Source of the DNA: Macrostomum lignano | Lineage: Eukaryota | Length of the DNA stretch: 64,000 bases | Reading direction: 5' to 3' | Assembly (NCBI GenBank): GCA_002269645.1 | Contig: NIVC01002825.1 | Coordinates: forward strand, 1 to 64,000 | Shown: positions 1-64,000 of the stretch, piece by piece | How the letters are laid out: every line of letters begins with the position of its first letter | Numbering within the stretch: position 1 is the stretch's first letter | Made by a program: the position numbers and the translations under genes | Notes under the pieces: model-generated | Database searches by the model: none | What the model saw: only the letters and a program-made list of their open reading frames with translations | What the model was told of the DNA's origin: nothing

Positions 1-729
1 TTTGAATTCGTCACATGAGACATCGAACTGTCACTACAGTGGCAGCAGTGGGCACATGGTTATGGTTGGATTGGAAAAAGTTCCGATGTTTGCACATGGT
101 TGTGCAATGTTCATGACCCCAACGCACCACTTCGGTAAGGCAAATTCGAACTTGTTATCAAAGTGGAAGGTCTAAGGTTCTGGAACTCGAGCGCTTATCA
201 GGAACTCTAAGCGATTGAGAGTTGCACAAAGCGGTGGGCAATATAAAAAATTTTATCATTGTTTTCAAAGTCAACGAGCTGTTTTGCTTAAATTTTTCTG
301 GCTTTGGACTCTTCAGCTGGGGCTTATCTTGAGGATGTTGACAAAAAATCAGAATGACTTTACAGTAAGATAGTGAAAGCAACAAATAATAAAATAACAG
401 CGCTTCAATTAAATTCTCAAAACCATTTTCTCAACGCAAAAAGTATAGGAAAATCATTTCCTATCATACTGCAATTCACCCGCCAGCAGGGGAGTCAGGT
501 AGCCCTGGGACAAATGAGGCAGCGCCAACTGCATGTAGAGAGAAATCTACTACACCTGCCAATGTGCCAGATGACGACGTTGTACGCCTGATGTACTATT
601 TGAGTTGCATAAGAAATGTACTGCCTGACTGCATGCCAGCCCACCTGACAAACTACTCCAACTACAGCAATCTGAGCCACTGGTAATTGAGATCGCCAAG
701 GCGTTCCCGCCGAGCAAAATGTGAGCACC

Positions 730-1592
730 CGCATAGTGGAAAGAGACTTTCGCGCTGCGACCCCTGGTTCGATTCTGCACGCGGCCACATTCGTTGCTTG
801 TGCATGGAAATTGGCCGAATGGATTATCGAACGATTAACACCCATGGGGGCCGACACCGAAGGCACATAGAGTGTACATGCATGACGATTAGTACACCCT
901 GTGTGAGCGTGTGTGTGAGTGCGTGCCTGCGTACAGTATTGGCGCGCTTGTATGTGCTCAGAAGTCCACAGGGAGAGGTGGGCTAACCCCCCTCGACTTG
1001 TGGGCTAACCCCCCCCCCCTTGGCTGTCCCCTGTCCTTCCTCCGCCATGCGCAGATCCCTGCTTGGACTTAACCGCAGGGACATCAGGGCGGTGACTATG
1101 GCTGTTTTGCCAGGCATCGTCACGTCCAGGGAAAATCCGCAGTGAGGATGCCCCTTCTGCCTTTCCGGTGTCGAGAATGCGGAGTACTTCATCTGTGAGT
1201 GCCCCGCCTTTACTCAGGCAGGCTCACCTACCTCAGCCCAAACCCGGACCTCTCCGACCTTTTCGAGCCCGAGAATCTCTGCCAGCTCGTCCGCTACCTA
1301 AGGGCTACCGGGCGAGCGACAGTCCACCTCTTGGACCCTCCGGAGGGGGACCGCGCTGCGGACACCGGCACCACCGGATCTCCCTGCGCGACACCGCACA
1401 ACTAGCTGCCCGTGGTCGCCAGGGGTTAGCGAAATGGGCGGCAACGCCTCCTCGCTGTTTCCGGACGCACGGAGCCCCCTGCAGCTGAGTCAAGTCAAGT
1501 GCTCAGGAGTCAGCGGAATGGGCAGAATCGCCTCACAACTGGCTGTGGGACGATATCGCTGAGAGTGTTGCGCCAGGTTGCCTCACAACCCT
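730..1592 (+). mobile_element. tRNA-derived SINE family A, copy 1 (730-966 plus 1499-1592), split by a LINE fragment
   Basis: A-box-like TAGTGG and B-box GGTTCGATTC near 733-775. Body TACACCCTGTGTGAGCGTGTG..GCGTACAG..GTGCTCAG is shared with copies near 2975-3275 and 31890-32125. The 3' part resumes at 1499. Confidence 0.7.
967..1498 (+). mobile_element. 5'-truncated non-LTR retrotransposon 3' fragment (R1/Loa/I-like C-terminal zinc knuckle), decayed
   Basis: Encodes [51 protein letters not shown] with a stop and a frameshift. Ends in a (CAAGT)n tail. Flanked by a 13-bp near-identical duplication GTGCTCAG(A/G)AGTC at 954-966 and 1499-1511. Confidence 0.65.
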
Positions 1593-2483
1593 ATAGTCGT
1601 AATTATTTATATTCTAGAAATTCATAGAGTTGCCTCACCCCCAGGTGTGCAGTCAGCAGACTCGATCGATATCACAGTGCTTAGACAGAGGGTGGTTGCG
1701 ACTCCCACTCTGTACTTTTACGGTAGCGTTGCTGTCTCATAAAAGCTGTGTGAAATCTTGGAGCTCATGAAGCTTAATTTTCCACTCGCTCCCTGCGGCT
1801 GCCTCGAGGGCCGACGCAAGCTTGCAGGTCCCTAACTTGCAGGCGCTGACCCACTGAGCAAAGGGTATCCTCCTTTCCTCTCCTTTGCCCTGATCTTTTC
1901 AGCCCCCTAGCTCGTATTTATCAAAGTTGAAAATGCCGGCGAACGATGCGGTGCCTTCCTGAAGTTCACTTCGCTGGAGGAGACGATCAGCGCCCTGGGA
2001 ATTGAAAGTGACGGAGCCACCGTGATGGCTCTCAGACGGCAGGCGTCATCGGAGCACCTGCTCGAAGTGTTTGCCTACGAGGAGGCCTGGGCTCGTAGAA
2101 ACTACTTCGCTGCTCGGCTGAGAAAGATTCTGGAAGAGTAAGTTTTAAAGCCGCTAAAACACACGAATTTCCATCAATCGCACATTTGTATAGTTATAAA
2201 AGATGTTTTGAAATTTGATTATGCCCTATTTTTGTAATCCTAATTTTTAGGAGCTCAAGCTCTTGCACCGTGCTGTAGACCAAGGTACAATAAGAAAGGC
2301 ACAACATATCAAAAGATGAACACTGGATCTGCCTCCTATCAAAAGCAATAACAATTTTTGTGCTGAAAAAATTAAAACCTCCTATCTCTGTAGTGTCTTT
2401 TTCGGCGAAAAGTTGCCTTCAAAACATTTACCATAGATTTCGAGTGTAGCGTCCTATATATATGTTACTTGAGTAGTCCTTGA

Positions 2484-2859
2484 CTAGAAGTTACCGTTGT
2501 ATCAGGACGTAACACTCGTAAATATTGCAAAAATTTTTGAAGGCCCGCTTGTTTGTATATTGGAGCTAATCTTGAAATGCTTGCTCATAACTCTGGATCA
2601 GTTGCACTTTTATCATGCAAAGAGATAATTTGTCGCTAGGTTGTTCGAAATTTTGTACTCTTTAAGACGACACAAAGTTTGGTCCTATCTTCCTACATAT
2701 ACAGGAAGATATATGTAGGAACGGCAGGCGTACAGTGCAGAAATGGCTATACGCAATATTTCATAGAAGTCAAAATGAATTAAGTGTTGCAGTCATTTCA
2801 TGTATTAATCCATAGTCTCGACAAAGTAGCAGACGTCCTGATATAACGGTAACTTCTAG
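2484..2859. mobile_element. MITE-like non-autonomous DNA element, 376 bp
   Basis: 27-bp terminal inverted repeats CTAGAAGTTACCGTT(G/A)TATCAGGACGT at 2484-2510 and 2833-2859 with 1 mismatch; non-coding interior. Confidence 0.65.
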
Positions 2860-2974
2860 CTAGTGGTCCTTGAGTGAGACATTTTTCATAGCTTTCCCTT
2901 TCTAACATAACAGGAAGATGTTACAAAAAGGTCTTACCGGCTACCAAATTTCACTAACAAGACCAACACAGATC

Positions 2975-3275
2975 CCGGGTTCGATTCATTTCACATTCAT
3001 TTGGGGCCTTATGTACACGAAAATTGGCCAGGGGTTGTCGATTCACACCCACGAGGGCCAGCCCCAAAGCACAGAGAGTGTACATGTCTGATGATTAGAC
3101 GTCAATGGGCTGCTGTACACCCTGTGTGAGCGTGTGTATGAGAGCTTGCCCGCGTACAGTACTGGCGCTCTTCTATTGGTGCTCAGGAGTCAGCGGAATG
3201 GGCAGAACTGCCTCACAAGTGCTGGCTGTGGAATGATGTCGCCGAATGCTTTGCACCAGGGTGCCCGGAGCCCTC
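2975..3275 (+). mobile_element. tRNA-derived SINE family A, copy 2
   Basis: B-box GGGTTCGATTC near 2978. Shares CACAGAGAGTGTACATG, TACACCCTGTGTGAGCGTGTG and GTGCTCAGGAGTCAGCGGAATGGGCAGAA with copy 1, and is uninterrupted at the site where copy 1 carries the LINE. Confidence 0.7.
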
Positions 3276-3825
3276 TTACAAATATCGAATATTTAAATTT
3301 TTAATTCATAGGTAATCGTGAACTTACTCTGATGAGTGCACAGCGCCCCTGACTGTACCATACCATCGCCATTGAGAAATTAAAAAATTAGTAAACAAAA
3401 AAAATTAGTCTGAAGCCCTCACTCATTTTGATACCTTGTAAAAGCAGAGACAATGAAGACACCACCCACGAGAAAAGCTGCTTCTTCTGTAAGAATGCAA
3501 GTATTTCCAGTTGCAGTGTGGCCATGAGGTACAAAAAAACAATAAAGAGACGGGTGAAGAGATTCGTGCCAACAAGCGCTTCGACACTTGACCCCCTCTC
3601 CAGTACTACTCGAGTGGGCGTACTCAGGCTGGTCTCATTGAGCAGTTCTTAACTTGGGTCTAAAAGGTTTGCACGCAATTCTTAGTGCGAATATCTTTTG
3701 CTTGGCTGGAGGGTGGGGTCCTGTCAAATTCCTTGAGTTATTTTATAGAATTCCTGTCTAAAAGTTTGTCACCGCTTAAAAAAGCTGTTTATAGATCCGC
3801 CTTGCGCTTCTGTGCTTCAATCTGT

Positions 3826-4325
3826 GTTTCTGTGATCTGTGATTCTGCGAGTCTGTGATTCTGTGATTCTGTGAGTCTGTGAGTCTGTGATTCTGTGATT
3901 CTGTGATTCTCTGATGTGATCTGCGATTCTGTGATTCTGTGATTCTGTGATCTGTGATTCTGTGATTCTGTGATCTGTGATTTTGTGAACTCTGATCTGT
4001 GATTTTCTGATCCGTGATTCTGTGATCTGTGATCTGTGATTCTGTGGTTTTGTGATTTGTGTATCTGTGATCTGTGATTCTGTGATTCTGTGATTCTCTG
4101 ATGTGATCTGTGGTTCTGTGATTTGTGATTCTGTGATTCTGTGATTCTGTGATTTGTGATTCTGTGATCTGTGATTCTGTGGTTCTGTGATTTGTGATTC
4201 TGTGATCTGTGATTCTGTGATTCTGTGATTCTCTGATGTGATCTGTGATTCTGTGATTCTGTGATTTTGTAATCTGTGATCTGTGATTTTGTGATCTGTG
4301 ATTCTGTGATTCTGTGATCCGTGAT
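3826..4325. repeat. Degenerate (TGTGATTC)n / (TGTGATC)n microsatellite
   Basis: Directly visible 7-8 bp periodicity. Confidence 0.9.
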
Positions 4326-4569
4326 TTGTTTTTCTTGCTCAGTTTGGCTTAAGGATTTCTGAGGATCTTCATGCAGGCATATTTTGCCTGCTAAGTTGTA
4401 TCAAAACGTCTGAGAGAGCCTCTATAACCATGTTTGGCCAACTTGGCTGAAAGTATTAGCCAGATATACAGGTAGAAAGTGCCAGCAGACGCCTCCGAGT
4501 TTATTCGGAGTTCACGTGGAGTTCAACGGTACTTTTGCGTAGCTGCCAGCTCAGTGCACAGGACTGCAA

Positions 4570-4669
4570 TTTCACCAGGCCGAAACTTCACATTGCAGAA
4601 ATGGCTTGCACTCTCTTTCGTAACTATCGTAGCTATATTTCGGCAATGTGAAGTTTCGGCCTGGTGAAA
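4570..4669. repeat. Perfect 27-bp inverted repeat (hairpin or miniature MITE)
   Basis: TTTCACCAGGCCGAAACTTCACATTGC (4570-4596) is the exact reverse complement of 4643-4669. Confidence 0.85.
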
Positions 4670-5147
4670 GCGCTCCGTTTTTCTGACGTACTGACAGCGC
4701 ATTTTGTTGCCATGCCGCGTGTTGCAGCTTGAAATACAGAAACAGCGAGTTGGCACAGGGTCGATTCTTAAATCTAAAAGAGATTTTTAGATTTCTCTTT
4801 AAAGGCGTTGTCGCAGTTGATAACAGCTCAGAATTCGCCTCTTATTGAAGAAATTGTTGTGCATATTTTTCTAATTCCAAATTCAAGTGCACTTTATTGT
4901 ACCTGCGCTAAAAAAGTGTTTGGTGAGGATGTCAAGATATTTTTCGTGCATTATCTCCAGGATATTCAAATAAGATTTTGTGAAAAGCACCGGGCTAGCA
5001 AATTTCTCAGTTTAGCCAATAAGAATGCTGAGGAGTCCAGATTGATTAAAATGCATAAATACGCCGGCTCAAAAAGCAGAAATAGCAGATAGAGAAATTT
5101 TATCGACTTGCTTAACTCAACAATCTCTTCAACGGCAAGCAGCAGCA

Positions 5148-5997
5148 ATGGCCGCCCTAGCGCACATGCAGCAGCGCCAGCTGCAGGTTGAGAAAACTGG
5201 CAGCCGAACGACCGTCCCCAACCACAGCGTTGGCCGGCTCATGTACTACCTGAAGTGCATGACGGACGTGCTTGGTGACTGCATTCCAGCACACCTGACC
5301 AACTATTCCAATTGCTACGGGCTGAGCTACTCGGACAGGCAGGTGGTCATCGAGATTGCAAGGGAATATCCGCCAAGCAAGATGTGAGATTTACTGGCTT
5401 TGGATTGGGGTGTTCAGCTGCTTCCCGCATGTCCTCTTGCAACATCCGCGTTGTTGTTACCTGTTACATCCGGGTCATCAAGTATCCCAATTTTACCTGT
5501 TACATCCGGGTCATCAAGTATCCCCATTTTACCTGTTATATCCGGGTCATCAAGTATCCCTATTTTTACCGGCAACCTGCAACCACCCACAGACCGCTCT
5601 TCATTCCTGTTGATGACGCTGGAGACAGCAGCAACGACTTCCTGACGTTCAGCTCCCTGGAGGAAACGATCACAGCGCTGGGCATCCAGGGCGACGGAGA
5701 AGCGATGATGGCACTGAGACGTCAGGTGTCCAACCAGCACCTGTTCAAGGTGATGGTCTACGAGGATGCCTGGGCTCGCAACAACTATTACGGACCACTG
5801 AGGGAGATTCAGCGGGAGGAGGAGCAGAGGCGATACCGGCAGCTGCAGGCCGCTCCCTCGTACGGCAGCAGGAAAAAGTGCGTGAGCTCTCGCGTTAAAA
5901 AATGCTGGACTTCCTATTCACCGCTTAGACCAGAGCAATTAAATTCTTAAGTATCTTATTTTACGCTTTTAGAAGTTCCACCTGTGTCCTGCTGTGA
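5148..5997 (+). CDS. Uncharacterised 181-aa protein with C-terminal polybasic plus CaaX motif (exons 5148-5383, 5593-5877, 5973-5997)
   Basis: Phase-2 GT-AG introns (GTGAGA..CACAG; GTGCGT..TTTTAG) give a continuous frame MAALAHMQQRQLQVEK..RLMYYLKCM..WARNNYYGPL..YGSRKKSSTCVLL*. The same exon phases and a CaaX end occur in the upstream paralog. Confidence 0.75.
5458..5570. repeat. 36-bp tandem repeat, 3 copies, in intron 1 of the CaaX gene
   Basis: CTGTTACATCCGGGTCATCAAGTATCCC recurs at 5461, 5497 and about 5533. Confidence 0.85.
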
Positions 5998-6105
5998 GCT
6001 CGCCAACTCTGCCAGCAAGAAGTAACGGATCTGGGTGTTACATCGACAAATTATAATAGATTTCGAGTAACGCGTTAAAATAATTTACAAACGAAACAAC
6101 AAAAG

Positions 6106-6219
6106 GGGTCGTACTATAAAGCCGTCGTAGCGTAAGTTCGATCGTACATCGGAACTTTTACACTACGAAGATAGGAGCTAAGAACGATCATATCTTACGA
6201 TGGCTTTATAGAACGGGCC
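6106..6219. mobile_element. Small decayed MITE-like element
   Basis: Imperfect terminal inverted repeats of about 22 bp: GGGTCGTACTATAAAGCCGTCGTA versus TACGATGGCTTTATAGAACGGGCC. Confidence 0.4.
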
Positions 6220-7049
6220 ATAAACTCTCTATTTCTACAAGGATCACACTCAAATATTCATTTCAGCGCGTCTTTAAATAGTTTTTACTTTGGTTGGAAA
6301 TGTTTATTGCTTTTTAGAAATTCCTTCTTCACCTCGTGCTTTGTACTTTAATACCTCATTTTCGTTGGCATTTGACCGAGATCATATCATTCCTAAGCAA
6401 GTTTTTTTGTATTAAATTTGTACCAGATTAATTTTTAGATAACATGTAGATTTTTCTGCATAAATTTTTGTAGCTATGTACAATAGTATTATAGTGTAGT
6501 TAGCGGTGTTCGTTTCAAAAGTTTTTTACGTCACATATCGGTGGCTTAAGGCTAAATTTTCGGAGTCTGAAATGCGAGTAATTGCATAAAACAATGGAAT
6601 TCCCTTTTGCTTTCTGAGCTTTTGTGTTGTTAAATGTTTTAGGCAGTTGGGGGCAAACTTTCCGCTTTATGTTTTTTTCTATAAGAACATGAAATTATTT
6701 TTGCTAAAAAATAAAGTTTTAACCTGATGGCTTTGGATGGATCCGATTTAATGCGATGTTTTGAACAATTGAAATCTGTATGCAGGAGGGGTTGTTTGTC
6801 ATTTTGCACATTTACTGCAGGTGTAGGCAAGAGTCAGATGGGTAAAAAGCATTTGCAAAGTCTAAAGAGATGAAAGAAAAAGAAAGAAAATACTTCTCAT
6901 TGTTTCGGCTGGGTTCTGTTGCACCGAGATAGAAAGCTCGCAACCCCCAACTTCATGCAAAAGTTGTGGCAATAATATATTGAGTTCGGAATGCGGGGTA
7001 ATAAATAAACGTAATATTAAAGTGACTATCAACGAATTGAAGGTGCTTT

Positions 7050-7226
7050 TCAAGGAATCGAGGGTGATTATCAAGAAATTGAGGGTGATTATCAAGGAAT
7101 TGAGGGTGATTATCAAGGAATTGAGGGTGATTATCAAGGAATCGAGGGTGATTATCAAGAAATTGAGGGTGATTATCAAGGAATTGAGGGTGATTATCAA
7201 GGAATTGAGGGTGATTATCAAGGAAT
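7050..7226. repeat. 21-bp minisatellite, about 8 copies
   Basis: Unit AGGAATTGAGGGTGATTATCA. Confidence 0.9.
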
Positions 7227-7857
7227 CGAACGCAATCGAAAATTAGTTGTCCAACAAAATTTTATCGCAAATCCAAATGGCCAATAACTTCCATTATGCT
7301 TTTATAAAACCTCTGTAACTTAAGAAAAAAGAGCAAATCTTTTGCGCACTCTCATTTTTCTGATATTTACTTTTGATTAGAAGATTAAACAAAGAAAGAA
7401 AACATCTTGATACCATTGAAGTGTCACACTCGAATGCCTAAGGTATAGAATATCATCACACTTTGTAATAAATAAACAGTTTATTATATCATCTACAGAG
7501 TTGGAAGAATTACAGAACTCAAACAGGATTGCCTGCAATCAAGTTAAAAATGTTTTTTAAGTGTATCGTTGCTGATTAAACTACTTATAGTATTATTGAG
7601 CAAAATTAGTATAGAATGTTTAGAATTCGCAAGATAAAAAGGTTAAATAAAAAGGTTGTATTTGTTATTTATACCACTTTTACAATTAAATAATCTATAT
7701 GGATATATAGAATTGTTTTTGCAAACAAAGCATAACAAACTTTCATAAATTTGATGGAACTCTTTAGAACAACTGATATGTGGAAGACAGAATTGTCTGA
7801 TTGTTATACCGAAGCAAAAAGCTGATCAACATTTGTACTTTTAGTTGCAGTTGTACA

Positions 7858-10800
7858 TCAGGCATCGCCGATCAGGGCCAGAAGAATCTTGCGATAATCG
7901 CCGCTGGTGTCGTCCTTGATCCATTCGGCGAGGCTCTGCCCGAACTCCTTCTGGAAGGCGGTCTTGATCTGAACCATGTCCACCTCGCAGCGGCTGATCA
8001 CGATGCGAAGCAGCGTCTTGTCGTTGGTGCCTGGAGACGAATAGAGGGCGTTGAATAGAGGATGTGCAACCGACAGCTCAGCCGCAGCTATTGCGCGGCG
8101 CATCTGAAGGCTGCTGCGTACGGCTGTTCAGACCAAGGACTGGAGGGTTGCCACACGTACCCTCAATTACCCCAGCTAATGCTGGCACCCATTTTACCGC
8201 TGGGTGAACTGAAGCAATTCAGAGTTGAGTGTCTCGCTCAAGGACAAATTGTTCCAGCGGGATCGCGGATCGAACCCCTGACCCCGTTCAGTCGTGAGTT
8301 CAACGCTCTAACCACTACGCTACAACCCCATCAGACCAATCAGGAATCCAGAGTGTCTCACTCGCTGACTGCGGATCGGTTGTCGCCTTGAATAGTTACA
8401 ACATTAGGACAGATATTTTTGCCATCAACCCCTCCCTTTCACTTAAAGTGACACTTTAAATATAGAAAGTCTGAAAACCTCAAAGTTTTTTTACACAATG
8501 CTCAATTTCTTGAAAAATTTTCCCACATTGCTTGTCACGCTCGCTCGATCCTTTTCTCTCTGATTGAGCATGATTGAGTCACTTACCCAGGCCCTTCATC
8601 GCCTTCTGCAGCGACTTAGCAAAATAGGCCGGCTTGTTCTGAATGCAGCGGACCAGAGTCAGCATGGCGCGGAGCAGGTCGCCAGACATCTCCGCCTTCA
8701 AGGAGTCCTCGAGCGTCTTGCCGGTCAATTTCTCGTATTCGGCAAACAGGGCGCGCAGGTGGGCGTTGTTGTTGCCGCAGAGGATCTCGTTGAACTTGCT
8801 CTCGTCCGTGCCCCACTTGCCGACGCCGGCCTCCTGCAGGGCCTGGGCGTCCTTCTTCACCTGCTCCGGATCGTAGGAGCTGCCCTCCGGCCGGGCGCCG
8901 GTGAGCAGAGACACCAGAATGCGCTTGAAGTGGCCGGATGTGTCCGACATAACGTCGTCCTCAAGTTCGCGATTGTAAGCTGAGTTTGGTGTGCGGTATT
9001 GGAGTCGAAGAGTTGTTAGAAAGTTCATGACTCATTGGGATGGCAATTTTGCACGCTGTTTTTAGTTGTTTTCAGTGCGTGGTGTGTTTCGCCTTTCAGG
9101 GTCAGAGGGTGAGTTTCGTGAGCCAATAGTTGCTGTGTCTATAGTACGTAGTGCATTGTGCCCTTCAGGAGTCAGAGAGCTTTTCTGAACAAATCGTTCG
9201 GTTCCAGTAGATTAACCATCCATCTGGAATGCTTATTTTGGCCAGGGCATACAATATGAATCTGATCACTGAAAGCGGAGCAAACTCACTGGCTTTGTAG
9301 ATTTTCTTGATCTCCTCGATTTGGGCCTGCGTTCTGGTGCAGATGACCTCAATCAGGCAGTCCTCGTCCGTGCCCAGGCCCTTCACCGCCTCGCGAAGCT
9401 CTTTAGCGTCGTACTCGGCCGGTCCCAGGCACAGATTCTGGCAGATCTTGTTGAAATTGCCGCTCAGCTCGCTGTCCAACTCGCGTTTGAGATCTTTGCC
9501 GTATTTCATCTTGAAGGTGCGCACAATTTCCATACGCTGGGTGACGGTCCGATGGCCGAGCACGTTGATGATGCTCTCTTCGTTGGTGCCCAAACCTTTC
9601 ATCGCCTTGCGCAGCTGCTCCGCATCGGCCGCAGCGCTGAAGTTCGGATACGGCTTCAGCGTGCCCTCCTGGACGTACTCCTCCTGCAAGAAGAAGGCCT
9701 CCCCGGCCGGCTCTGGTGGCTTTTCCTCCTTCAGCACAATGGCGTCCGCCTTCTCGTGGTCGGTCTTTTTCACCTGTAGAAAGTGCAATTTTGCAATTTT
9801 TGCAATACTTTCTGCTGCAGACACCGATGACTAATAGAGCACACAGATCTAGTTATTCGCACCTCAGTCTCCACTTTGTGACTTGGCGGCGGCGGCGGCT
9901 TCTCCGCCTTCTTGGGCGGCGGCGGCGGGGGCGGCGGCGCAGGGTCCCTGCTGGCACTCTTTGAGGGAGGCATAAACGGCTTCGGTTTTGGATCCGAGCT
10001 CCGCTTGTTGATTGACTTTGGCGCGTGCAGCGGCTTCTTGTGCCCCGGCTTGGCGATGTGGATGGTCAGTAGGAATGAGTCGTCTGACTCGTCAAGTTCA
10101 GCTGACAGCACCTGCATCGGCAATGTGGAAAACTTCAAGCTTCTCATCGGCTTTAGAGTGACAGGCTCGGCGCGAGCAGGATAAAATTTCTTAGAAATTA
10201 AGACCAATTTGATTATTTCATGAGTAAGCTTACCTTGCCAAATTTCTGGTCCTCAATGGCAGCTTGAAATCCTCCATCTTTCCGCGCGAACTGCAGCAAG
10301 TGCGCGTAGACGTGCTGCAGCTGAGTTTTAAAGTCGCCGTCGCCCTTGCTGACAGGCAGGCAGGGCGGATCGGCGACGATCTTCTCAACCTTCTCAGTCT
10401 TCTTGGACTCGTCCACTAGGCGCCGGATGTCGTCCAGGGTGCTCTTGCGAGTCTCGTCCATGCGCTGCGACAGCTGTTGAGTCAGCTGGTTCAGCTGCTG
10501 CGGAGTCACGCCCTGTTGTGTGTTTTTTTCGCAACTAGTAAGAAAATGTTGTGCCAGCACCAACTTTAAGTAGGTTTTTAAGTATGAGCCCCCCGAGGGC
10601 CCTGACATTTTCACTCTGCAGTGTCCTCCCTCCCGTCCCGGCAGAATTCTAATCTAGCCACTCGTACGCTTGTAGCAAGCTTGGTGGCGGCGGGTCACTG
10701 CCGGCGTGAGCGCGTCAACTTTTACGATATTAGGGCCAATTTTTTCCTACGATTAGAAAAACGTAACGCCTAAAGATGAGACAGTTTTTAGCGCACAGAT

Positions 10801-12054: not shown

Positions 12055-13172
12055 CTGAAATGTTAAATAATGGTCGGTATATTGAAGAAACAGGACGTTC
12101 GTCCTGCATGGATGTAAAATTATAGTTTTAAAAATATATTGTTACAAAACTACTGTTGACTTAGTATAAAATGTGCATCACAAAATTCATCATAGCTTAC
12201 TTATTTACTTTTTTGTCATAAAAATCATATTAAATTTCAATTTAAGAGGAAGAATTTACGCTTTGACAATTAAAAATACTAGCTAGTAAACAGAATTCTT
12301 CAAGTACATTCAGTTCTATGAATACAATGTCTATATTTTAGCTATTGTTAATGATCTTGGCTTAAAGCAAGTGATATTAAAAAATACTAAAAAGGAACCA
12401 TAGACAAATTCCAAAGAGCTGATATTTTACATAATTTGACATTTAAAAGTAGCTGTGTGCAAATTATGATGATTTTTATAAATTCAATATAAAGAATTTG
12501 TAAACATCATCATTTAAAGTGATACAAAATAATTCTTTTGCTTTATTTCAAGCTAAATAAGAAAGTTAGAAAAAGTAAAACACAGTTGAAATATTATTTT
12601 AAAAGGACCACCAAGCAACAAAAATTTAAGTTGAGTTAAATGTTAAATCGTTTAATTATAAAGTTTAACTTAAAGATTGTTGGTTTTATATAGCCTGACA
12701 TGACACTGTGAAATGCTACAAATAAAAACAGTAAAATACTTTAAATAAAGCGAAATAAAAAACAAAGTCTATCTTTTCTTGCGTTAATATCAAGGATTTT
12801 TTAAAATTAGAATATAAAGTACTTGTTATTACATTAGCTATCGTAGATATTATACTTTATAGATAAGAAATTCAGAAACAAAAATGATACCGTACACGCA
12901 AGTCAAATTCCCTGCACTACAAAAATACTAAAATTTAATGTACAATTAGTGTGGAAAAATTGTAATAAAACTTTAATGTTGTGCTTTTAATCTGAAACTT
13001 GAGCTGAAAGCATTTTGTAAGAATTCATTGCATAGAGTTTGTTTATATGCATGTTGTCAAGACAAAGTACAAGACAATTTTTAAAAATGAGTTAACAAAC
13101 ATTTATAACTTATCCTATAGATAATTTTGAGTTTTAGAGTTTTCAAGACACTTCTGGTAGTGAATGCAATAA

Positions 13173-13802
13173 ATGGACCCTGGAGCATCAAACTGGGACG
13201 TTTCAAAACGTTATAAAACAGACGTTCTAGTCGGAAATTGGTTTGAAGAACGACTAGTGTACGATAGAAAGAACCATACGCATCCATCGAGCTACAGCAT
13301 CGACTTTCAACAAAGGGGATACCAGCAGCCAGATGTTGTGCTTCGAAGGAACGGCTGGATTCGCTCTAACGGAGTAGGTAAGGAAATACTGCTAGCCCAT
13401 CACGGCGATGCCTACAAGAAAAACTGGATCACTTGGTACGACGAGGACTTCAACGGTCGAGGCTTGCCTAGGAACCCCCCGCTGCGCGACTGGCACTCTG
13501 GCAACATGGCCTGGAGCCCGGAGCGCTCAGACTTCCCCGTCCAGGGCAGCCCGACCAACTGGGGCTTGAAGGAAAGACTAGACAAGCGATGGAATACCAG
13601 TCTACAGGAGCGCTCGACCACGTCAAAGAATGACTTCAGTACTACGTACAACGCGTCATATCTGAAGCCGAGAACGGAGGACCTGCTGGCTGCACGACAG
13701 CCGAGCTTCCTGCCACCAATCAGCGGGAGGATGCCGGCAAACACCGGCAGTCAGGACAAGTTCGAGGAGCCGGCCCAGAAGCTGTCGGTCGTGGCCACCT
13801 AG
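13173..13802 (+). CDS. CFAP107: Cilia- and flagella-associated protein 107 (C1orf158)-like, intronless, 209 aa
   Basis: Motifs W..SKRYKTDVLVGNWFEER, HHGDAYKKNWITWYDEDFN, LRDWHSGNMAWSPERSDFP..PTNWGL and STTYNASY match the C1orf158 family pattern from memory. Confidence 0.8.
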   Translation: MDPGASNWDVSKRYKTDVLVGNWFEERLVYDRKNHTHPSSYSIDFQQRGYQQPDVVLRRNGWIRSNGVGKEILLAHHGDAYKKNWITWYDEDFNGRGLPRNPPLRDWHSGNMAWSPERSDFPVQGSPTNWGLKERLDKRWNTSLQERSTTSKNDFSTTYNASYLKPRTEDLLAARQPSFLPPISGRMPANTGSQDKFEEPAQKLSVVAT

Positions 13803-19200: not shown

Positions 19201-22200
19201 GAACAGCATGCCGAACCAGACAATCACCTGGGCGTACAGGACATCGAGCACAGAGTCGGAAATGTTAAACTCAGGCGGTCCAATCAGCTTGGCGGCTTTG
19301 CATTGGCATTTGCGAGCGATTAGGGACCTGTTTGTGAGGCGAGGGTTTGTCTTTGATCACCTGGCTTGCTAAATCACGTGTGCTGGATTCTGGATGATGC
19401 AATAATCCACTAGAGCTAGAGAGATGAGACATTATATAGAAATACTTTGAGCTTGGATGCAAAATTTGAGATTGATTTTAGAGAATAGAGATTAATAAGG
19501 ATGGGAGATAACAGACGAGAGATAAGAGATAAGAGATTGAGATTAGATTAGAGATGAGAGATTATAGAGATTGAGATTAGAGATTAGAAATCAGAGACTA
19601 GAAATCATAGATTAGAGACAATAGACAAGAGATTGAAATTGAGATTAGATTAGAGATTAGAAATCAGAGATCAGAGATTAGAGATAAGAGATTATAGACT
19701 GCATGTAGAGATTGAAAATAGAAAATTGGAGATTGGAGATTAAAAAGTGGAACTTTGAGAGTGAAGGAGAAAATAAGAATTAGAGAGTAGAGATTAAAGA
19801 TCAGAGACTATAGATAAATTATTACAGATTAGAGATTGAAGATTGGAAATTGGGAAGATTACAAGAAGATTAAACAAAGTAAAAAAGCTCGAAAAGCGAA
19901 CCTGGGCAGCTCAACAACGAAGCACACGACCAGCTGTACGGCAAAGAAGGTGATCTCCAGCTTGTAGAAGGCCTGACCAACGTAGGCCTCCCAGCAGTGC
20001 ACAGCGGAGCACCGGGGCGCCACCCCAACTCCGCAGGTGTCCTTGGTGTCGCAGGTAATTATGGAATAAATCGAAATAACCAGAACGGTTAAACTGGCCA
20101 ACCTGAGAAAGATGCAGCGGCCCAACGTCACAGCCAGCTCAGTGTCCGGGGTGTACTCTTCAAGGCGAGCCAGCAGCTGGAACAGGATCGGCAGGATCGC
20201 CACCAGCAGCGAGATGATCACCATAGGCAGGTACTGGTAGGCCAGGTAGGCGAAGCTGCTCGTGTCCACCCCGGCAGCCGTGGTGTACTCGGCCGAAACC
20301 TTCTGGGCCTGGTAGATGGCAAAGCCGGCGCCGCACAGCAGGCCGAGAACCAGGATGTTCACCAGGACTCGCTTGGCAATCAGGCTGCAGCCGCCGCATC
20401 TGCCAGCTTCCAGCCGTCGCTGCAACAGTCGGTGAAGATCGAGTTCGGCGACCAGGTTGTTGCGAAGGAGCTGTTTGGCCAGGTTGGCAGTCTTGGAGTC
20501 GCTCAGGCCGAAGTCCCAGGCCGAGAGGATGAGCGGCGAGAACCGGGTGGACTTGGACGACACTGACGGCTGGGCGCGCTGGAGCAGCACCTCCTTGAAG
20601 GCGGCGCCAGTTCTGATAGTTGAGGGCGTTTGAGAGGCGAGTGTGAGGATCTTCGGTGGGCGACGGGGCAGATGAGATTATTGCGAAGGGATAATCAGGG
20701 AAAAAATCAGGAAGGGATAATCAGGTAGGGATAATCAGGGAGGGATAATCAGGTAGGGATAATCAGGGAGGGATAAATCAGGGAGGGATAATCAGGTAGG
20801 GATAATCAGGGAGGGATAATCAGGTAGGGATAATCAGGGAGGGATAAATCAGGGAGGGATAATCAGGTAGGGATAATCAGGGAGGGATAATAAGGGAACG
20901 GATAATCAGGGAGGGAATATCAGGTAGGGATAATCAGGTAGGGATAATCAGGGAGGGATAATAAGGGAACGGATAATCAGGGAGGGATAATCAGGTAGGG
21001 ATAATCAGGTAGGGATAATCAGGGAGGGATAATAAGGGAACGGATAATCAGGGAGGGATAATCAGGTAGGGATAATCAGGGAGGGATAATCAGGGAGGGA
21101 TAATAAGGGAACGGATAATCAGGGAGGGATAATCAGGTAGGGATAATCAGGGAGGGATAATCAGGGAGGGATAATAAGGGAACGGATAATCAGGGAGGGA
21201 TAATAAGGGAGAGATAATCAGGTAGGGATAATCAGGGAGGGATAATCAGGTAGGGATAATCAGGTAGGGATAATCAGGGAGGGATAATAACGGAACGGAT
21301 AATCAGGGAGGGACAATCAGGGAGGCACAGTGAGGGAGCTAATGTCAAGCTCATCTCCATCTATAAAGGCGCAGGAGACGGAGTCAAGAGTCTGCAGGCC
21401 GAAACCTCAGCCAAGCAGAAGCAATACGCATGTAGAATTGCACCTTTCGAGCATGAACAACATGCTGATGAAAAAGGCGGCTCCAGTGACGGCGAGGTAA
21501 GCCACGGGCATGTTGTAACTCAATGCTCCAATGCTTAGCGCGGTGGGGAAATAGTAGCCTACGAACAGGATAGTGTTCTCCAGAATGCCCTGCAGAGAAT
21601 TAATAGGTAATACTTCTTTGTAAATCAGCTCTCAATGCCAATGCCAGAAAATATTTTTGTTTTATTAATTTATTTCTTGGAATGGTAACAATTAGTTTAG
21701 GTACAAATAATGTCGAAGAAATTGATACATTTGTTTAAAATGCACAACTAAATTTCTACATGTCTATATTTTACGCTCGAACTTTTTATTAAAGAAACAA
21801 AAAACTGTTTTAAAACCTTTTTAACAAAGGTTTCGACATTTTTAGTTGTATTCTAGGTATTTTTGAGTTAAGCAAAGCATGTAAAAATATGAAAAGTACA
21901 TAAATAACGTGGACATCTTTTTAATCTCTAATATATCCAATACAAAATTTAACAAAAAATTGACACTCAAAACATCAGCTTGCAACATTAAGTCCTTTGT
22001 TTATGAGCGTAAGCATTCTTCTACAAATATATTTGCATTTGAATAAATTAAATCTAGAATTTAAAATTGCAGACCTGTGACTGATACTCTTAAGCACTCA
22101 TTTACTTACACGGAACCACATTAATAATTTTGCGCTATTTTCACGGAACCGAAACACAAAAATCTATACCATCTATTAAAAATATTCCTTATAGACATTA

Positions 22201-27460: not shown

Positions 27461-43681
<16,221 letters not shown>

Positions 43682-61500: not shown

Positions 61501-63290
61501 AGCGGCGGAGGAATCGGCGGGTGTCGTCGCCGCTGGCCCGGCGAACTCGATGGTCAGCTCTCTCCGCAGCGTGCCCAGCAGAGCTCGGGTGTCGCTGCCC
61601 GGTCTGGCAGCCAGATGTCGAACGACATCCCATTCGTCGTGATCGGCGGTGGCCGACAAGGCAGTCGCTCTCGACGCCTCGGATTCGTCGTTGCTTTTAT
61701 CGTTGCCGCCGGCGCCGCCGCTGCCGCTGTTGATGTTGACAGCGAAGGTCCGGCTGGATCCAGCAGGACGAGGTTGGACGCTGATCAGTCGAGAGCTGGA
61801 GGCCGCTGGTTCGGGTGGCTGCGGCGGCCGCGGCTCCGACAGGTTCTGACGGCGCAAGTCCTGGGGTTTGGAAAATATGTGGTGTTTTTGGAGAAACTTT
61901 TAGCAATTTCATACTACTGACTTGATGCAGTAGAGTGTTGCGAGAGTTTTTCTATCATGATGCGAATCCACGTGACTGTTAACAAGTTAAAAAGTTCACG
62001 ATTGAGATCATAAGTGACTTTATGAGTGAGGTCATAAGGGACTTTATGAGTGAGATCATAAGGGACTTTATGAGTGAGGTCATAAGTGACTTTATGAGTG
62101 AGGTCATAAGGGACTTTATGAGTGAGGTCATAAGGGACTTTATGAGTGAGGTCATAAGGGACTTTATGAGTGAGGTCATAAGGGACTTTATGAGTGAGGT
62201 CATAAGTCACTTTATGAGTGAGTTCATATCATTTCAATTAAAACTTGCTTTAAGCATATGGAAAAGTAAAAGTAACAACTATGTACTTTAATTTTTTATT
62301 GATATCAAATACTTTAAATAGTCGACTCACCTCCTCAAGCATGGGTCTGAGTTTGGCCAACTGGTCCCCAGTTCGGTAGGGCGAAGGCAGAGTCTGGGCT
62401 CGATGTGCCGTCGACATCTCCAGGCTGTCAATGTCCACTGAAAGTTTTGGTTGTCAAGGCAGTTTATGAAATTATGCTTGAGAATTACTCAGTTAATGGT
62501 AGCGAGGAGGGACTATCGGTGTGGCCCTCTGGTTGGATTCCCTCGGTGCCCCCATAGCCCTCACTCCTGCAAGTATTTATTATGCATGAATATGCTTACT
62601 TGCAACCGCTTCAAATCGGGTATCGTCGCTCTCGGATTTTCGCCTCATTCTGTGGGTTGTTTTTGTTATTTTTTATATCGAAATGGGTCATCACATTGAC
62701 ATCATCTAGCTTGAATAGATCACATGACAGCGATAAGACACTACTAAAATATGATAATTGCGAACTTCGGATTTTTTTTAACTTCTCCTATCTATTTGAA
62801 GTATTTTATAAACAAGTTTTCTTAAACTGTCTATGGAAAACTGACAGTACAGCTACTTACAGTAGATTATATGCAAATTAAGCAAAAACTTACTCGTGCA
62901 AGCCGATCTCGCCTGGAGTTGCTCTGCGCATGAAATTAAAAGAAATATTTGAGGAAAATCAGTGCGAATAATATCAAGAACAAAAAATATTATTTCCTAA
63001 AAATTGCTATGCAGTCTCACTCACTGAGATTGAGCAGTTGCGTCATCAGCATCCGAAGCTTCATCGCTTGATGACTCATCACTGTCTGAACTGCTTGAGT
63101 GCTTCTTCTTTTTCTTTTCCTTCTTTTCCTTTTTCTCCTTCTTTTTCTTCTTTTCTTTCTTTTCCTTTTTCTTCTTTTCCTTCTTCTTCTTCTTCTTTTT
63201 CTTTTTCTTCTCAGAGTCGTCGCTGCTGCTTTCGCTGCCGCTGCCCTCTTTGCGCTTTTTCTTTTTCTTCTTTTTTGAGTCCTCTTCGGG
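61501..63290 (-). CDS. Internal exons of an uncharacterised Lys/Ser-rich low-complexity protein (candidate exons 63290-63025, about 62923-62894, about 62426-62331, 61860-61501); 5' end probably beyond the window, 3' end unresolved
   Basis: GC-rich open segments bounded by AG/GT: PEEDSKKKKKKKRKEGSGSESSSDDSEKKKK..HSSSSDSDESSS, LEMSTAHRAQTLPSPYRTGDQLAKLRPMLEE and DLRRQNLSEPRPPQ..RALLGTLRRELTIEFAGP. Phases can be joined, but no family was recognised. Confidence 0.5.
62000..62222. repeat. 24-bp minisatellite with internal inverted repeat
   Basis: Unit GACTTTATGAGTGAGGTCATAAGG; TTATGA and TCATAA are reverse complements. Confidence 0.9.
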
Positions 63291-63371
63291 CTGGAAGCAG
63301 CAGTCAGAGGGCGTTTCTGTAGCGGCTTATAGTGGACTGTCTTTGTAGTTGTTGAGGGAGAAAATGATCTA

Positions 63372-64000
63372 GTGAGTTTATGAGTGAGTTCATGAGTGAG
63401 TTCATGAGTGAGTTCATGAGTGAGTTCATGAGTGAGTTCATGAGTGAGTTCATGAGTGAGTTCATGAGTGAGTTCATGAGTGAGTTCATGAGCGAGTTCA
63501 TGAGTGAGTTCATGAGTGAGTTCATGAGCGAGTTCATGAGTTAGTTCATGAGTGAGTTCATGAGTGAGTTCATGAGTGAGTTCATGAGTGAGTTCATGAG
63601 TGAGTTCATGAGTGAGTTCATGAGTGAGTTTATGAGTGAGTTCATGAGTGAGTTCATGAGTGAGTTCATGAGTGAGTTCATGAGTGAGTTCATGAGCGAG
63701 TTCATGAGTGAGTTCATGAGTGAGTTCATGAGCGAGTTCATGAGTTAGTTCATGAGTGAGTTCATGAGTGAGTTCATGAGTGAGTTCATGAGTGAGTTCA
63801 TGAGTGAGTTCATGAGTAAGTTCATGAGTGAGTTCATGAGTGAGTTCATGAGTGAGTTCATGAGTGAGTTCATGAGTGAGTTCATGAGTGAGTTCATGAG
63901 TGAGTTCATGAGTGGAGTTCATGAGTGGAGTTCATGAGTGGAGTTCATGAGTGAGTTCATGAGTGAGTTCATGAGTGAGTTCATGAGTGAGTTCATGAGT
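63372..64000. repeat. 12-bp (TGAGTGAGTTCA)n array running off the window end
   Basis: Direct periodicity; source of the THEL/MNSL/MSEF ORFs. Confidence 0.95.

What the first reader, a model, noticed from the sequence alone, without database searches (positions are those of the whole stretch)
5148..5997. Uncharacterised small protein whose prenylation signal sits on a dedicated 25-nt exon
Seen: splicing of three exons gives a 181-aa protein ending SRKKSSTCVLL*. The ORF track misses this because the CaaX box is on a tiny third exon. Established: a basic patch plus CaaL is a geranylgeranylation and plasma-membrane targeting signal, as in Ras/Rho proteins. The protein has no GTPase or other domain I recognise; the conserved core is RLMYYL.C..P.HLTNY.N ... 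WAR.NY. Inference: a membrane-anchored protein family of unknown function, possibly lineage-expanded.
Basis: partly seen in the sequence, partly recalled or inferred. Interest (0 to 1): 0.7.

Follow-up and report, generated by a model that had tools for sequence, protein, structure and literature searches.

The report
Lipid-anchored flatworm protein, undescribed domain family
This is a three-exon gene of the flatworm Macrostomum lignano whose 25-base last exon adds a lipid-attachment (CaaX) signal that the public gene models miss, and its roughly 150-residue domain belongs to a large, unnamed eukaryotic family that usually carries a membrane anchor at its end.

Summary
Exons 5148-5383, 5593-5877 and 5973-5997 join in frame to give 181 aa ending SRKKSSTCVLL*. 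The window is Macrostomum lignano DNA.

The window alone does not prove the micro-exon: three CaaX-like ends lie within 1 kb. Relatives do. The annotated neighbour P0002 has the same three-exon plan with a 31-nt last exon (…SSSGCTLL). A second, decayed window copy has a 28-nt last exon (…SSSSCTVL). A transcript-like contig from a related worm reads core plus CVLL without interruption.

The domain has no Pfam or PDB sequence match. Two confident AlphaFold models (pLDDT 83.5 and 88.4) have no Foldseek neighbour. The family is large: 1019 cluster representatives, from sponge, bivalves, rotifers, flatworm and protists.

Of 265 homologues, 113 end in a strict CaaX, against 5.6 expected. Another 75 end in a hydrophobic tail helix, and others carry LITAF, FYVE or PH modules.

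Best reading: a geranylgeranylated protein on the cytosolic face of a membrane, whose domain acts at the membrane; what it does there is unknown. UniProt's 197-aa read-through models, named "Ras-associating domain", are probably wrong. No transcript data could be checked. Plasma-membrane targeting specifically is not established.

The parts
5148..5383 (+). Exon 1 (236 nt; ATG at 5148). It encodes residues 1-78 plus 2 nt of codon 79, including the family signature G-R-L-M-Y-Y-L and H-L-T-N-Y.
   Evidence: Translation. tblastn of homologues. Donor AGAT|GTGAGA. The junction position matches P0002 (6242|7526) and falls where the transcript-like contig L003 is continuous at nt 281.
5384..5592 (+). 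Intron 1 (209 nt, phase 2). It contains a 36-nt tandem repeat of 3.1 copies at 5457-5566.
   Evidence: Unspliced reading stops at 5385-5387. The repeat is reported.
5593..5877 (+). Exon 2 (285 nt). It encodes residues 79-173 plus 2 nt of codon 174: the rest of the conserved domain (N93, F95, M133, W139, N143-Y144, P147) and a charged helix.
   Evidence: The AlphaFold model has pLDDT above 90 over most of residues 11-100 and 131-165.
5878..5972 (+). Intron 2 (95 nt, phase 2), donor AAAAA|GTGCGT. The public UniProt models read through it to the stop at 5948-5950. There are two alternative donors: 5860 (phase 2, keeps the CaaX) and 5882 (GTGAGC, phase 0, loses it). The acceptor is a tandem TAG|AAG (5973 or 5976), and both keep the CaaX.
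   Evidence: The homologous P0002 donor is GAAG|GTACGC, with the same phase and the same unusual C at +4.
5973..5997 (+). Exon 3 coding part (25 nt): completes Lys174, then Ser-Ser-Thr-Cys178-Val-Leu-Leu and TGA. The Cys codon is at 5983-5985 and the stop at 5995-5997. This is the CaaX box (CVLL).
   Evidence: Paralogue micro-exons of 28 nt (window 2251-2278, CTVL) and 31 nt (L001 8281-8311, CTLL). The CVLL tetrapeptide is fully geranylgeranylated by human GGTase-I in a yeast reporter (PMC11152559).
514..2278 (+). Second copy of the same family in the window: exon 1 514-720, exon 2 1910-2137, 28-nt exon 3 2251-2278 (…EESSSSCTVL*). Exon 1 has two frame breaks, near 540 and near 680, so this is probably a pseudogene.
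   Evidence: The tblastn match splits across frames. The sequence was read directly.

Best explanation
Window 5148-5997 is a three-exon Macrostomum lignano gene. Its product is a 181-aa cytosolic protein with three parts.

- Residues ~10-135 form an alpha/beta domain. It belongs to a large eukaryotic family that has no Pfam model and no relative of solved structure.
- Residues ~137-165 form a charged helix that serves as a stalk, followed by a short disordered Ser-rich and basic linker.
- The C-terminal CaaX box, CVLL, lies wholly on the 25-nt last exon.

Shown: the exon arithmetic; conservation of the micro-exon in paralogues; membership of the family; and enrichment of C-terminal membrane anchors across the family.

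Inferred from established CaaX biochemistry: geranylgeranyltransferase I adds a C20 lipid to Cys178. RCE1 then removes -VLL, and ICMT methylates the new C-terminus. This tethers the domain to the cytosolic face of a membrane.

Inferred from the family's fusions: the domain is a non-enzymatic, membrane-proximal binding or signalling module that needs to sit at a membrane, whichever anchor puts it there. Which membrane, and which partner, are unknown.
For: Gene model
- The join is in frame.
- P0002, a GenBank-annotated paralogue 400 bp to the left of the window, has exons 6001-6242, 7526-7786 and 8281-8311 in L001. Its last exon is 31 nt and encodes ...NSSSGCTLL.
- The second window copy has a 28-nt last exon encoding ...SSSSCTVL.
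- All of these last introns are phase 2. The Cys codon differs synonymously between copies (TGT versus TGC), while the flanks diverge.
- Contig L003 (P0003) carries the core plus SSSGCVLL in one uninterrupted ORF. Its alignment to the P0002 gene is continuous exactly where that gene has intron 1.

Family
- A profile search found 1019 representatives at E<=1e-3 and 589 at E<=1e-10.
- Named members come from Amphimedon, six bivalve genera, Adineta/Rotaria and an MMETSP protist, all labelled 'uncharacterized'.
- Ten of the eleven near-invariant residues are present in this protein.

Anchors
- 113 of 265 homologues have a strict CaaX, plus 12 of CNIL type. Shuffled tails give a mean of 5.6 and a maximum of 12.
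- 75 have a hydrophobic helix at the C-terminus.
- Fusions include zf-LITAF-like, FYVE (two proteins), PH, and a transmembrane segment followed by an LRR region.

Topology: there is no signal peptide or transmembrane segment (maximum KD19 0.72).

Chemistry: GGTase-I targets CaaL/I/M, and CVLL was 100% modified in a yeast reporter (PMC11152559). [quoted passage not shown]
Against: - No M. lignano transcript or junction read was available.
- The exact 181-aa sequence is absent from a collection of 15 billion proteins.
- The GenBank annotation of this contig calls P0002 but no gene at this locus.
- GTGAGC at 5882 is the better consensus donor. It would shift the frame and remove the CaaX.
- Two of the four copies in the cluster are decayed, and another M. 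lignano paralogue, P0014, has lost the CaaX.
- About a quarter of homologues show no anchor, although many of those are truncated or multi-domain.
- No catalytic or binding site, partner or phenotype is known, so 'binding module' is inference only.
Confidence: 0.72

Rival explanations
1. The public model is right. Intron 2 is retained and the product is the soluble 197-aa protein ending ...SRKKCVSSRVKKCWTSYSPLRPEQLNS, so the downstream CVLL is a coincidence.
For: Two UniProt entries (A0A1I8J2K3 and A0A1I8HEV3) carry this model. CaaX-like ends arise by chance at three sites within 1 kb.
Against: The read-through tail has no counterpart in any homologue. The two UniProt copies differ by two conservative changes across the 173 shared residues, but by two radical changes within the 24-residue tail. 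That fits non-coding sequence, though the numbers are small. Paralogues and relatives splice to a CaaX micro-exon at the same position and phase.
Confidence: 0.1
2. The stronger donor at 5882 (GTGAGC) is used with the 5973 acceptor. This gives about 201 aa ending ...RKKCKFHLCPAVSSPTLPARSNGSGCYIDKL, with no lipid anchor.
For: GTGAGC fits the donor consensus better than GTGCGT.
Against: That frame has no homology to any relative. The homologous donor in P0002 is also GT-R-C-G-Y, in phase 2. The CaaX plus immediate stop is kept in phase 2 in all three copies.
Confidence: 0.08
3. The gene is a silent or decaying duplicate in a tandem cluster. The frame is intact only because the duplication is recent, and no protein is made.
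For: The cluster holds a copy with two frame breaks and a copy lacking exon 2. No gene is called here in the GenBank annotation. No transcript-derived protein for this gene is in the collection.
Against: All three exons are open. Ten of the eleven near-invariant family residues are kept. The gene differs by about 50% from its neighbours, so it is not a recent copy, yet it is still intact. A second, near-identical intact copy exists, differing only by conservative changes. Missing Logan data is uninformative, because the annotated P0002 has none either.
Confidence: 0.12
4. It is a Ras-association (RA) domain protein, as UniProt names it: a ubiquitin-fold Ras effector.
For: The automatic UniProt name. 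One protist member has an N-terminal ubiquitin domain fused to it.
Against: There is no Pfam RA or ubiquitin hit at E<=10 for this protein, nor at E<=1 in any of 130 members. Both confident models are helix-rich alpha/beta structures, and no RA or ubiquitin-like chain appears among the Foldseek matches.
Confidence: 0.03

Closest known systems
MUB / UBL3 (membrane-anchored ubiquitin-fold proteins)
   Same: Small cytosolic proteins made of one globular domain and a C-terminal CaaX box. Prenylation tethers the domain to a membrane, where it recruits partners such as E2 enzymes or MARCH substrates (PMC4996978, PMC9001657).
   Different: The domain here is not a beta-grasp. It has no Pfam hit and no structural neighbour. 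This family also uses tail-anchor helices, LITAF, FYVE and PH modules as alternatives to CaaX.
Rho/Ras hypervariable region plus CaaX (for example the CDC42 CaaX tetrapeptide, CVLL, recalled from memory)
   Same: The tetrapeptide CVLL is the same, preceded by a few basic residues. It is a GGTase-I substrate class (PMC11152559).
   Different: There is no P-loop and no G-box motifs, and no Ras Pfam hit. The basic patch is three residues and is not conserved in the paralogues.
OAS1 p46 (CaaX supplied by a splice-dependent terminal exon)
   Same: Use of the last exon decides whether the protein carries a CaaX and goes to endomembranes (PMC8357416, PMC7612834). Here, retaining intron 2 or shifting the donor would likewise give an anchor-less form.
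   Different: No alternative isoforms have been shown here. The domains are unrelated.
Tail-anchored and LITAF-domain proteins
   Same: The domain faces the cytosol and is held by a C-terminal hydrophobic element. 28% of family members have such a helix, often with a Cys-rich flank, and some have a zf-LITAF-like module.
   Different: The window protein itself has no hydrophobic segment (maximum KD19 0.72). It relies on a lipid instead.

Membership tests
CaaX prenylation substrates (GGTase-I class) | Cys exactly four residues from the C-terminus | tested here: met
   Cys178 of 181 in the spliced product. This depends on use of a phase-2 donor (5878 or 5860).
CaaX prenylation substrates (GGTase-I class) | Aliphatic a2 and X = Leu/Ile/Met | tested here: met
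   The box is CVLL. GGTase-I targets CaaL/I/M, and CVLL was 100% modified by human GGTase-I in a yeast reporter (PMC11152559).
CaaX prenylation substrates (GGTase-I class) | C-terminus exposed to the cytosol (no signal peptide or transmembrane segment) | tested here: met
   Maximum Kyte-Doolittle 19-residue mean is 0.72, and the N-terminal 25 residues average -0.67.
CaaX prenylation substrates (GGTase-I class) | Isoprenoid actually attached, and localisation dependent on the Cys | not testable with these tools
   Needs metabolic labelling or a Cys-to-Ser localisation test.
Unnamed 'LMYYL' domain family (this work) | Signature residues A-x-L-M-Y-Y-L, S-P-D, N-x-F, M, W-x-x-x-N-Y-x-x-P in order over about 150 residues | tested here: met
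   Ten of eleven near-invariant columns are present; A29 is Gly. The single-sequence search reaches distant members at E = 2e-12 and 2e-9.
Unnamed 'LMYYL' domain family (this work) | C-terminal membrane-targeting element after the domain | tested here: met
   CVLL in this protein. Across the family, 113 strict CaaX, 75 hydrophobic tails, and LITAF, FYVE and PH fusions.
Ras-association (RA) domain proteins (the UniProt name) | Match to RA domain profiles, and a beta-grasp fold | tested here: not met
   No Pfam RA hit at E<=10, and none in 130 members. The models are helix-rich and have no RA or ubiquitin-like neighbour. The PROSITE profile that probably produced the name could not be run.
Ras/Rho small GTPases | P-loop GxxxxGK[ST] and NKxD motifs, and a Ras Pfam match | tested here: not met
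   The motifs are absent, and there is no Pfam hit.
MUB / UBL3 | Ubiquitin-fold domain directly followed by a CaaX | tested here: not met
   A CaaX is present, but there is no ubiquitin-family Pfam hit and no beta-grasp neighbour.
SNAREs (N-terminal domain + helix + C-terminal anchor) | SNARE motif of about 60 residues | tested here: not met
   Only 2 of 130 members give a weak SNARE hit (best E 0.0036). The helix here is about 29 residues.

The most novel reading that the evidence does not exclude
The roughly 150-residue 'LMYYL' domain is a previously undescribed eukaryotic fold that works only when held at the cytosolic face of a membrane. Evolution has attached it to at least five different anchors: CaaX with or without palmitoyl-Cys, a tail-anchor helix, LITAF, FYVE and PH. 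It has also been placed as the N-terminal part of proteins with a transmembrane segment and an LRR region, a layout that would suit a receptor. On this reading it would be a new membrane-proximal signalling or adaptor module. In Macrostomum, putting the anchor on its own micro-exon would let splicing switch between a soluble and an anchored form.
Probability: 0.3. Interest if true: 0.7.

Novelty: new variant of a known kind. Interest (0 to 1): 0.5.

Why it matters
Three things follow.

First, the finding corrects the public models of this gene. Those models read through the last intron and so hide the one feature that predicts where the protein sits.

Second, it brings to light a large family: at least 1019 clusters at 50% identity, found in sponges, molluscs, rotifers, flatworms and protists. 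The family has no Pfam model, no relative of solved structure and no Foldseek neighbour, yet it gives confident AlphaFold models. It is a candidate new domain family, possibly a new fold.

Third, the way unrelated C-terminal membrane anchors replace one another yields a concrete, testable statement about function: the domain must act at a cytosolic membrane face. M. lignano has transgenesis, mRNA injection and RNAi, so the prediction can be tested directly.

On the other side, prenylated proteins are about 1-2% of eukaryotic proteins, and domains of unknown function are common. Without a phenotype or a partner this remains a moderate-interest lead.

Tried and rejected
- Pfam scan of the spliced protein at E<=10 gave only a spurious PA2794-like_C hit. 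A Pfam scan of 130 members at E<=1 gave no recurrent family.
- PDB sequence searches, with the single sequence and with a profile, gave nothing meaningful.
- Foldseek of two models against the PDB, and of one against BFVD, gave a best E of 0.17-0.59 and TM no higher than about 0.24. The Hsp90-N and reverse-transcriptase rows are noise.
- Exact look-up of the 181-aa product: not in the collection. Look-up of the 197-aa model on contigs: not on record.
The read-through model P0001, identical over residues 1-173, was used instead.
- Neighbouring genes on homologue contigs L008 and L009 were scanned to infer function or organism, with no Pfam hits. Going by similarity to the Adineta protein, L002 and L008 are probably bdelloid rotifer DNA.
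- Literature: the motif 'LMYYL' returned nothing relevant, and 'Macrostomum lignano + prenylation' returned only the membrane-tag toolkit.
- SNARE-like, RA, GTPase and MUB readings were considered and rejected (see the membership tests).
- A chance-level test within the window showed that the window alone cannot establish the micro-exon.

Full report
**1. What is in the sequence**

The region is eukaryotic. The ORF starting at ATG 5148 stops at 5385-5387 if read straight through. Joining 5148-5383, 5593-5877 and 5973-5997 gives 546 nt: 181 codons plus TGA, ending ...AAPSYGSRKKSSTCVLL*.

Both introns are GT...AG. Their sites are AGAT|GTGAGA...CCCACAG|A and AAAAA|GTGCGT...TTACGCTTTTAG|A. ATG 5148 is the first in-frame ATG after an upstream stop. 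The mechanical ORF list shows only the two fragments.

**2. Source and public annotation**

A single-sequence search found a 100%-identical 197-aa UniRef protein from the flatworm Macrostomum lignano (P0001). It is named 'Ras-associating domain-containing protein'. It is the read-through model, ending ...SRKKCVSSRVKKCWTSYSPLRPEQLNS. A second UniProt copy, P0006, is the same kind of model.

Window 1-5599 is the reverse complement of GenBank contig NIVC01001794.1 (assembly GCA_002269645.1). The match is 99.96% identical, with two single-base indels outside genes. In that GenBank annotation only the neighbouring paralogue P0002 is called; nothing is called at the window gene. The exact 181-aa product is in no public collection searched.

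**3. Is the micro-exon real?**

The window alone cannot say. I enumerated all GT donors after the last conserved residue and all AG acceptors within 1 kb. That gave 152 combinations with a short terminal piece. Ten of them end in a loose CaaX, at three distinct sites (CVLL, CFVL, CFFL). In addition, the donor at 5882 (GTGAGC) fits the consensus better than the one at 5878 (GTGCGT), and it would shift the frame.

Comparison decides the matter.

- *Annotated paralogue.* P0002 lies 400 bp to the left of the window on the other strand. Its exons in L001 are 6001-6242, 7526-7786 and 8281-8311. The last exon is 31 nt, follows a phase-2 intron and encodes ...RNSSSGCTLL*. The only exon combination that reproduces the deposited protein uses donor GAAG|GTACGC. 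That is the same unusual GT-R-C-G-Y form as 5878.
- *Second window copy.* The copy at 514-2278 has a 28-nt last exon (2251-2278) encoding ...SSSSCTVL* after a phase-2 GTAAGT intron.
- *Aligned micro-exons.* The three micro-exons keep the Ser-rich run, the Cys (TGT or TGC), x-aliphatic-Leu and an immediate stop. The DNA on either side has diverged.
- *Transcript-like contig.* P0003 comes from a 996-nt Logan contig (L003) and is about 75% identical in DNA to P0002. It carries the core plus ...SSSGCVLL in one uninterrupted ORF. Its alignment to the P0002 gene is continuous at nt 281, exactly where that gene has intron 1. It therefore behaves as a spliced transcript of a related worm.
- *The two UniProt copies.* They differ by two conservative changes in the 173 shared coding residues, but by two radical changes in the 24-residue read-through tail. 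This is weak evidence, but it fits the tail being intronic.

Residual ambiguity remains. Donor 5860 is also phase 2 and would drop YGSRKK. The acceptor is a tandem TAG|AAG (5973 or 5976). All of these variants keep the CaaX.

**4. The family**

There is no Pfam hit at E<=10 and no PDB sequence hit. A profile of five members, searched against 1.84 billion representatives, found 1019 proteins at E<=1e-3 and 589 at E<=1e-10.

Named members come from the following:
- bivalves: Ruditapes, Pinctada, Mizuhopecten, Sinanodonta, Potamilus and Magallana gigas;
- bdelloid rotifers: Adineta and Rotaria;
- the sponge Amphimedon;
- an MMETSP protist.

All are labelled uncharacterised. Near-invariant columns are A-x-L-M-Y-Y-L, P76, N93-x-F95, M133, W139 and P147. 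The window protein keeps ten of the eleven. No conserved Cys, His, Asp, Glu, Ser or Lys set suggests catalysis.

**5. C-terminal ends**

I classified 265 homologues, leaving out the two read-through models.

| C-terminal end | Number |
|---|---|
| Strict CaaX | 113 |
| CNIL-type | 12 |
| Hydrophobic helix within the last 50 residues, often with a Cys-rich flank | 75 |
| Neither | 65 |

Shuffling each tail gives a mean of 5.6 strict CaaX and a maximum of 12 in 500 shuffles. About half of the CaaX members have one to three extra Cys just upstream, which are candidate palmitoylation sites. Many of the 'neither' group end within 20 residues of the domain, so they are truncated or, as here, missing a last exon. 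Others are multi-domain.

The multi-domain members carry these additions:
- a PH domain, with an N-terminal ubiquitin domain (P0056);
- FYVE (P0124, P0136);
- zf-LITAF-like (P0225, P0236, P0242);
- ZZ (P0090, P0050, P0139);
- a transmembrane segment followed by a DUF285/LRR region (P0058, P0121).

Apart from ZZ, every partner is a membrane-targeting or membrane-spanning element. This is the strongest functional clue: the domain is repeatedly selected to sit at a cytosolic membrane face.

**6. Structure**

Two AlphaFold2 models were made.

| Model | Alignment | Mean pLDDT | pTM |
|---|---|---|---|
| P0001 (identical to the window protein over residues 1-173) | 107 sequences | 83.5 | 0.75 |
| Oyster member P0038 | 130 sequences | 88.4 | 0.83 |

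In the P0001 model most of residues 11-100 and 131-165 score above 90. Both models show a short N-terminal strand or hairpin, four or five helices, a small sheet and a long C-terminal helix. That helix spans 137-165 in P0001 and 134-171 in the oyster protein.

Foldseek found nothing against the PDB (best E 0.41 and 0.17, TM no higher than about 0.24) or against BFVD (best E 0.59). AlphaFold DB was not available, so 'new fold' remains a possibility rather than a result.

**7. Mechanism**

The protein has no signal peptide and no transmembrane segment. GGTase-I targets CaaL/I/M boxes. The very tetrapeptide CVLL was fully modified by human GGTase-I in a yeast reporter (PMC11152559). From established CaaX processing I infer geranylgeranylation of Cys178, removal of -VLL and carboxyl-methylation, which would tether the domain through its helical stalk.

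The second signal is weak: R-K-K, net charge +3 over the last 14 residues, and no upstream Cys. It is not conserved in the paralogues. A single prenyl group without a second signal generally leaves proteins on endomembranes; this rests on established knowledge and was not tested here. I therefore do not endorse plasma-membrane targeting specifically.

[quoted passage not shown] A direct test is therefore available (PMC12633465).

**8. Comparison with known systems**

- *How it works.* It resembles MUB/UBL3, which is a small domain plus CaaX that recruits partners at a membrane (PMC4996978, PMC9001657). Its tail resembles that of Rho-family proteins. In gene structure it resembles OAS1 p46, where the use of a terminal exon decides whether a CaaX is present (PMC8357416, PMC7612834).
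- *Membership.* It fails the tests for RA domains, small GTPases, MUBs and SNAREs. The UniProt name is unsupported.

**9. Local expansion**

The cluster holds four copies:
- the window gene, which is intact;
- window 514-2278, with two frame breaks in exon 1;
- P0002, intact and annotated;
- a copy lacking exon 2 (L001 9640-9882 plus 12808-12840).

These are shown. Another contig has two more copies. One of them, P0014, keeps the three-exon plan with a 19-nt last exon but ends ...ALQMD, without a CaaX. The family is locally expanded and turning over, but it is not lineage-specific.

**10. Verdict**

The finding is a mis-annotated member of a large, undescribed family of membrane-anchored domains. 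Interest is moderate at 0.5. The domain and its interchangeable anchors make a good lead, but no function, partner or transcript evidence is in hand.

Noticed in passing
window 514-2278 (+): A second copy of the same family: exon 1 514-720, exon 2 1910-2137, and a 28-nt CaaX exon 2251-2278 ending SSSSCTVL*. Exon 1 has two frame breaks, a GA-type insertion near 540 and another near 680. It is probably a pseudogene, unless both assemblies share indel errors.
   Followed up: partly
window 5457-5566: A 36-nt tandem repeat of 3.1 copies at 95% identity, inside intron 1 of the gene (TTACCTGTTACATCCGGGTCATCAAGTATCCCAATT).
   Followed up: no
window 7022-7226: A 21-nt tandem repeat of 9.8 copies. It produces long spurious ORFs on both strands (6862-7246).
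   Followed up: no
window 2433-2445 and 6056-6068: An identical 13-mer, ATAGATTTCGAGT, lies about 155 nt and 59 nt downstream of the stop codons of the two window copies. 0.07 matches are expected by chance. It may be a shared 3'-UTR element or a remnant of the duplication.
   Followed up: partly
window 8061-8283 and 37193-37440; L001 7911-8186 and 12448-12700: A dispersed repeat of about 250 bp at 84-90% identity. It also sits inside intron 2 of P0002 and of the neighbouring partial copy, and is probably a small mobile element.
   Followed up: no
window 9165-9824 (-), 13173-13802 (+), 30645-31472 (-), 19859-20590 (-), 63017-63922 (-): Exon-sized ORFs with Pfam hits to annexin, CFAP107, the C2 domain, a TMC fragment and MgtE_N. 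These are ordinary animal genes that flank the cluster.
   Followed up: partly
L010 5001-5713 and 2399-2999 (NIVC01001655.1): Two more M. lignano paralogues in tandem. The annotated one (P0014) keeps the three-exon plan with a 19-nt last exon but ends ...LLRALQMD, so it has lost the CaaX.
   Followed up: partly
P0012 (468 aa), P0013 (314 aa): Close relatives of the Macrostomum group that carry three and two tandem copies of the domain in one protein, ending CLIQ and CIIQ.
   Followed up: no
L002 393-1079 and 1433-2110; L008: Two intronless tandem paralogues with Cys-rich regions and transmembrane tails, on metagenome scaffolds. They are most similar to Adineta steineri proteins, so the scaffolds are probably bdelloid rotifer DNA sitting in a 'metagenome'.
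   Followed up: partly
L009 2358-4937: Next to an AT-rich, intronless family member (P0010) lies an ORF of more than 860 aa. It has a hydrophobic N-terminus and several hydrophobic, Cys-rich segments, and no Pfam hit. The source organism is unknown.
   Followed up: no
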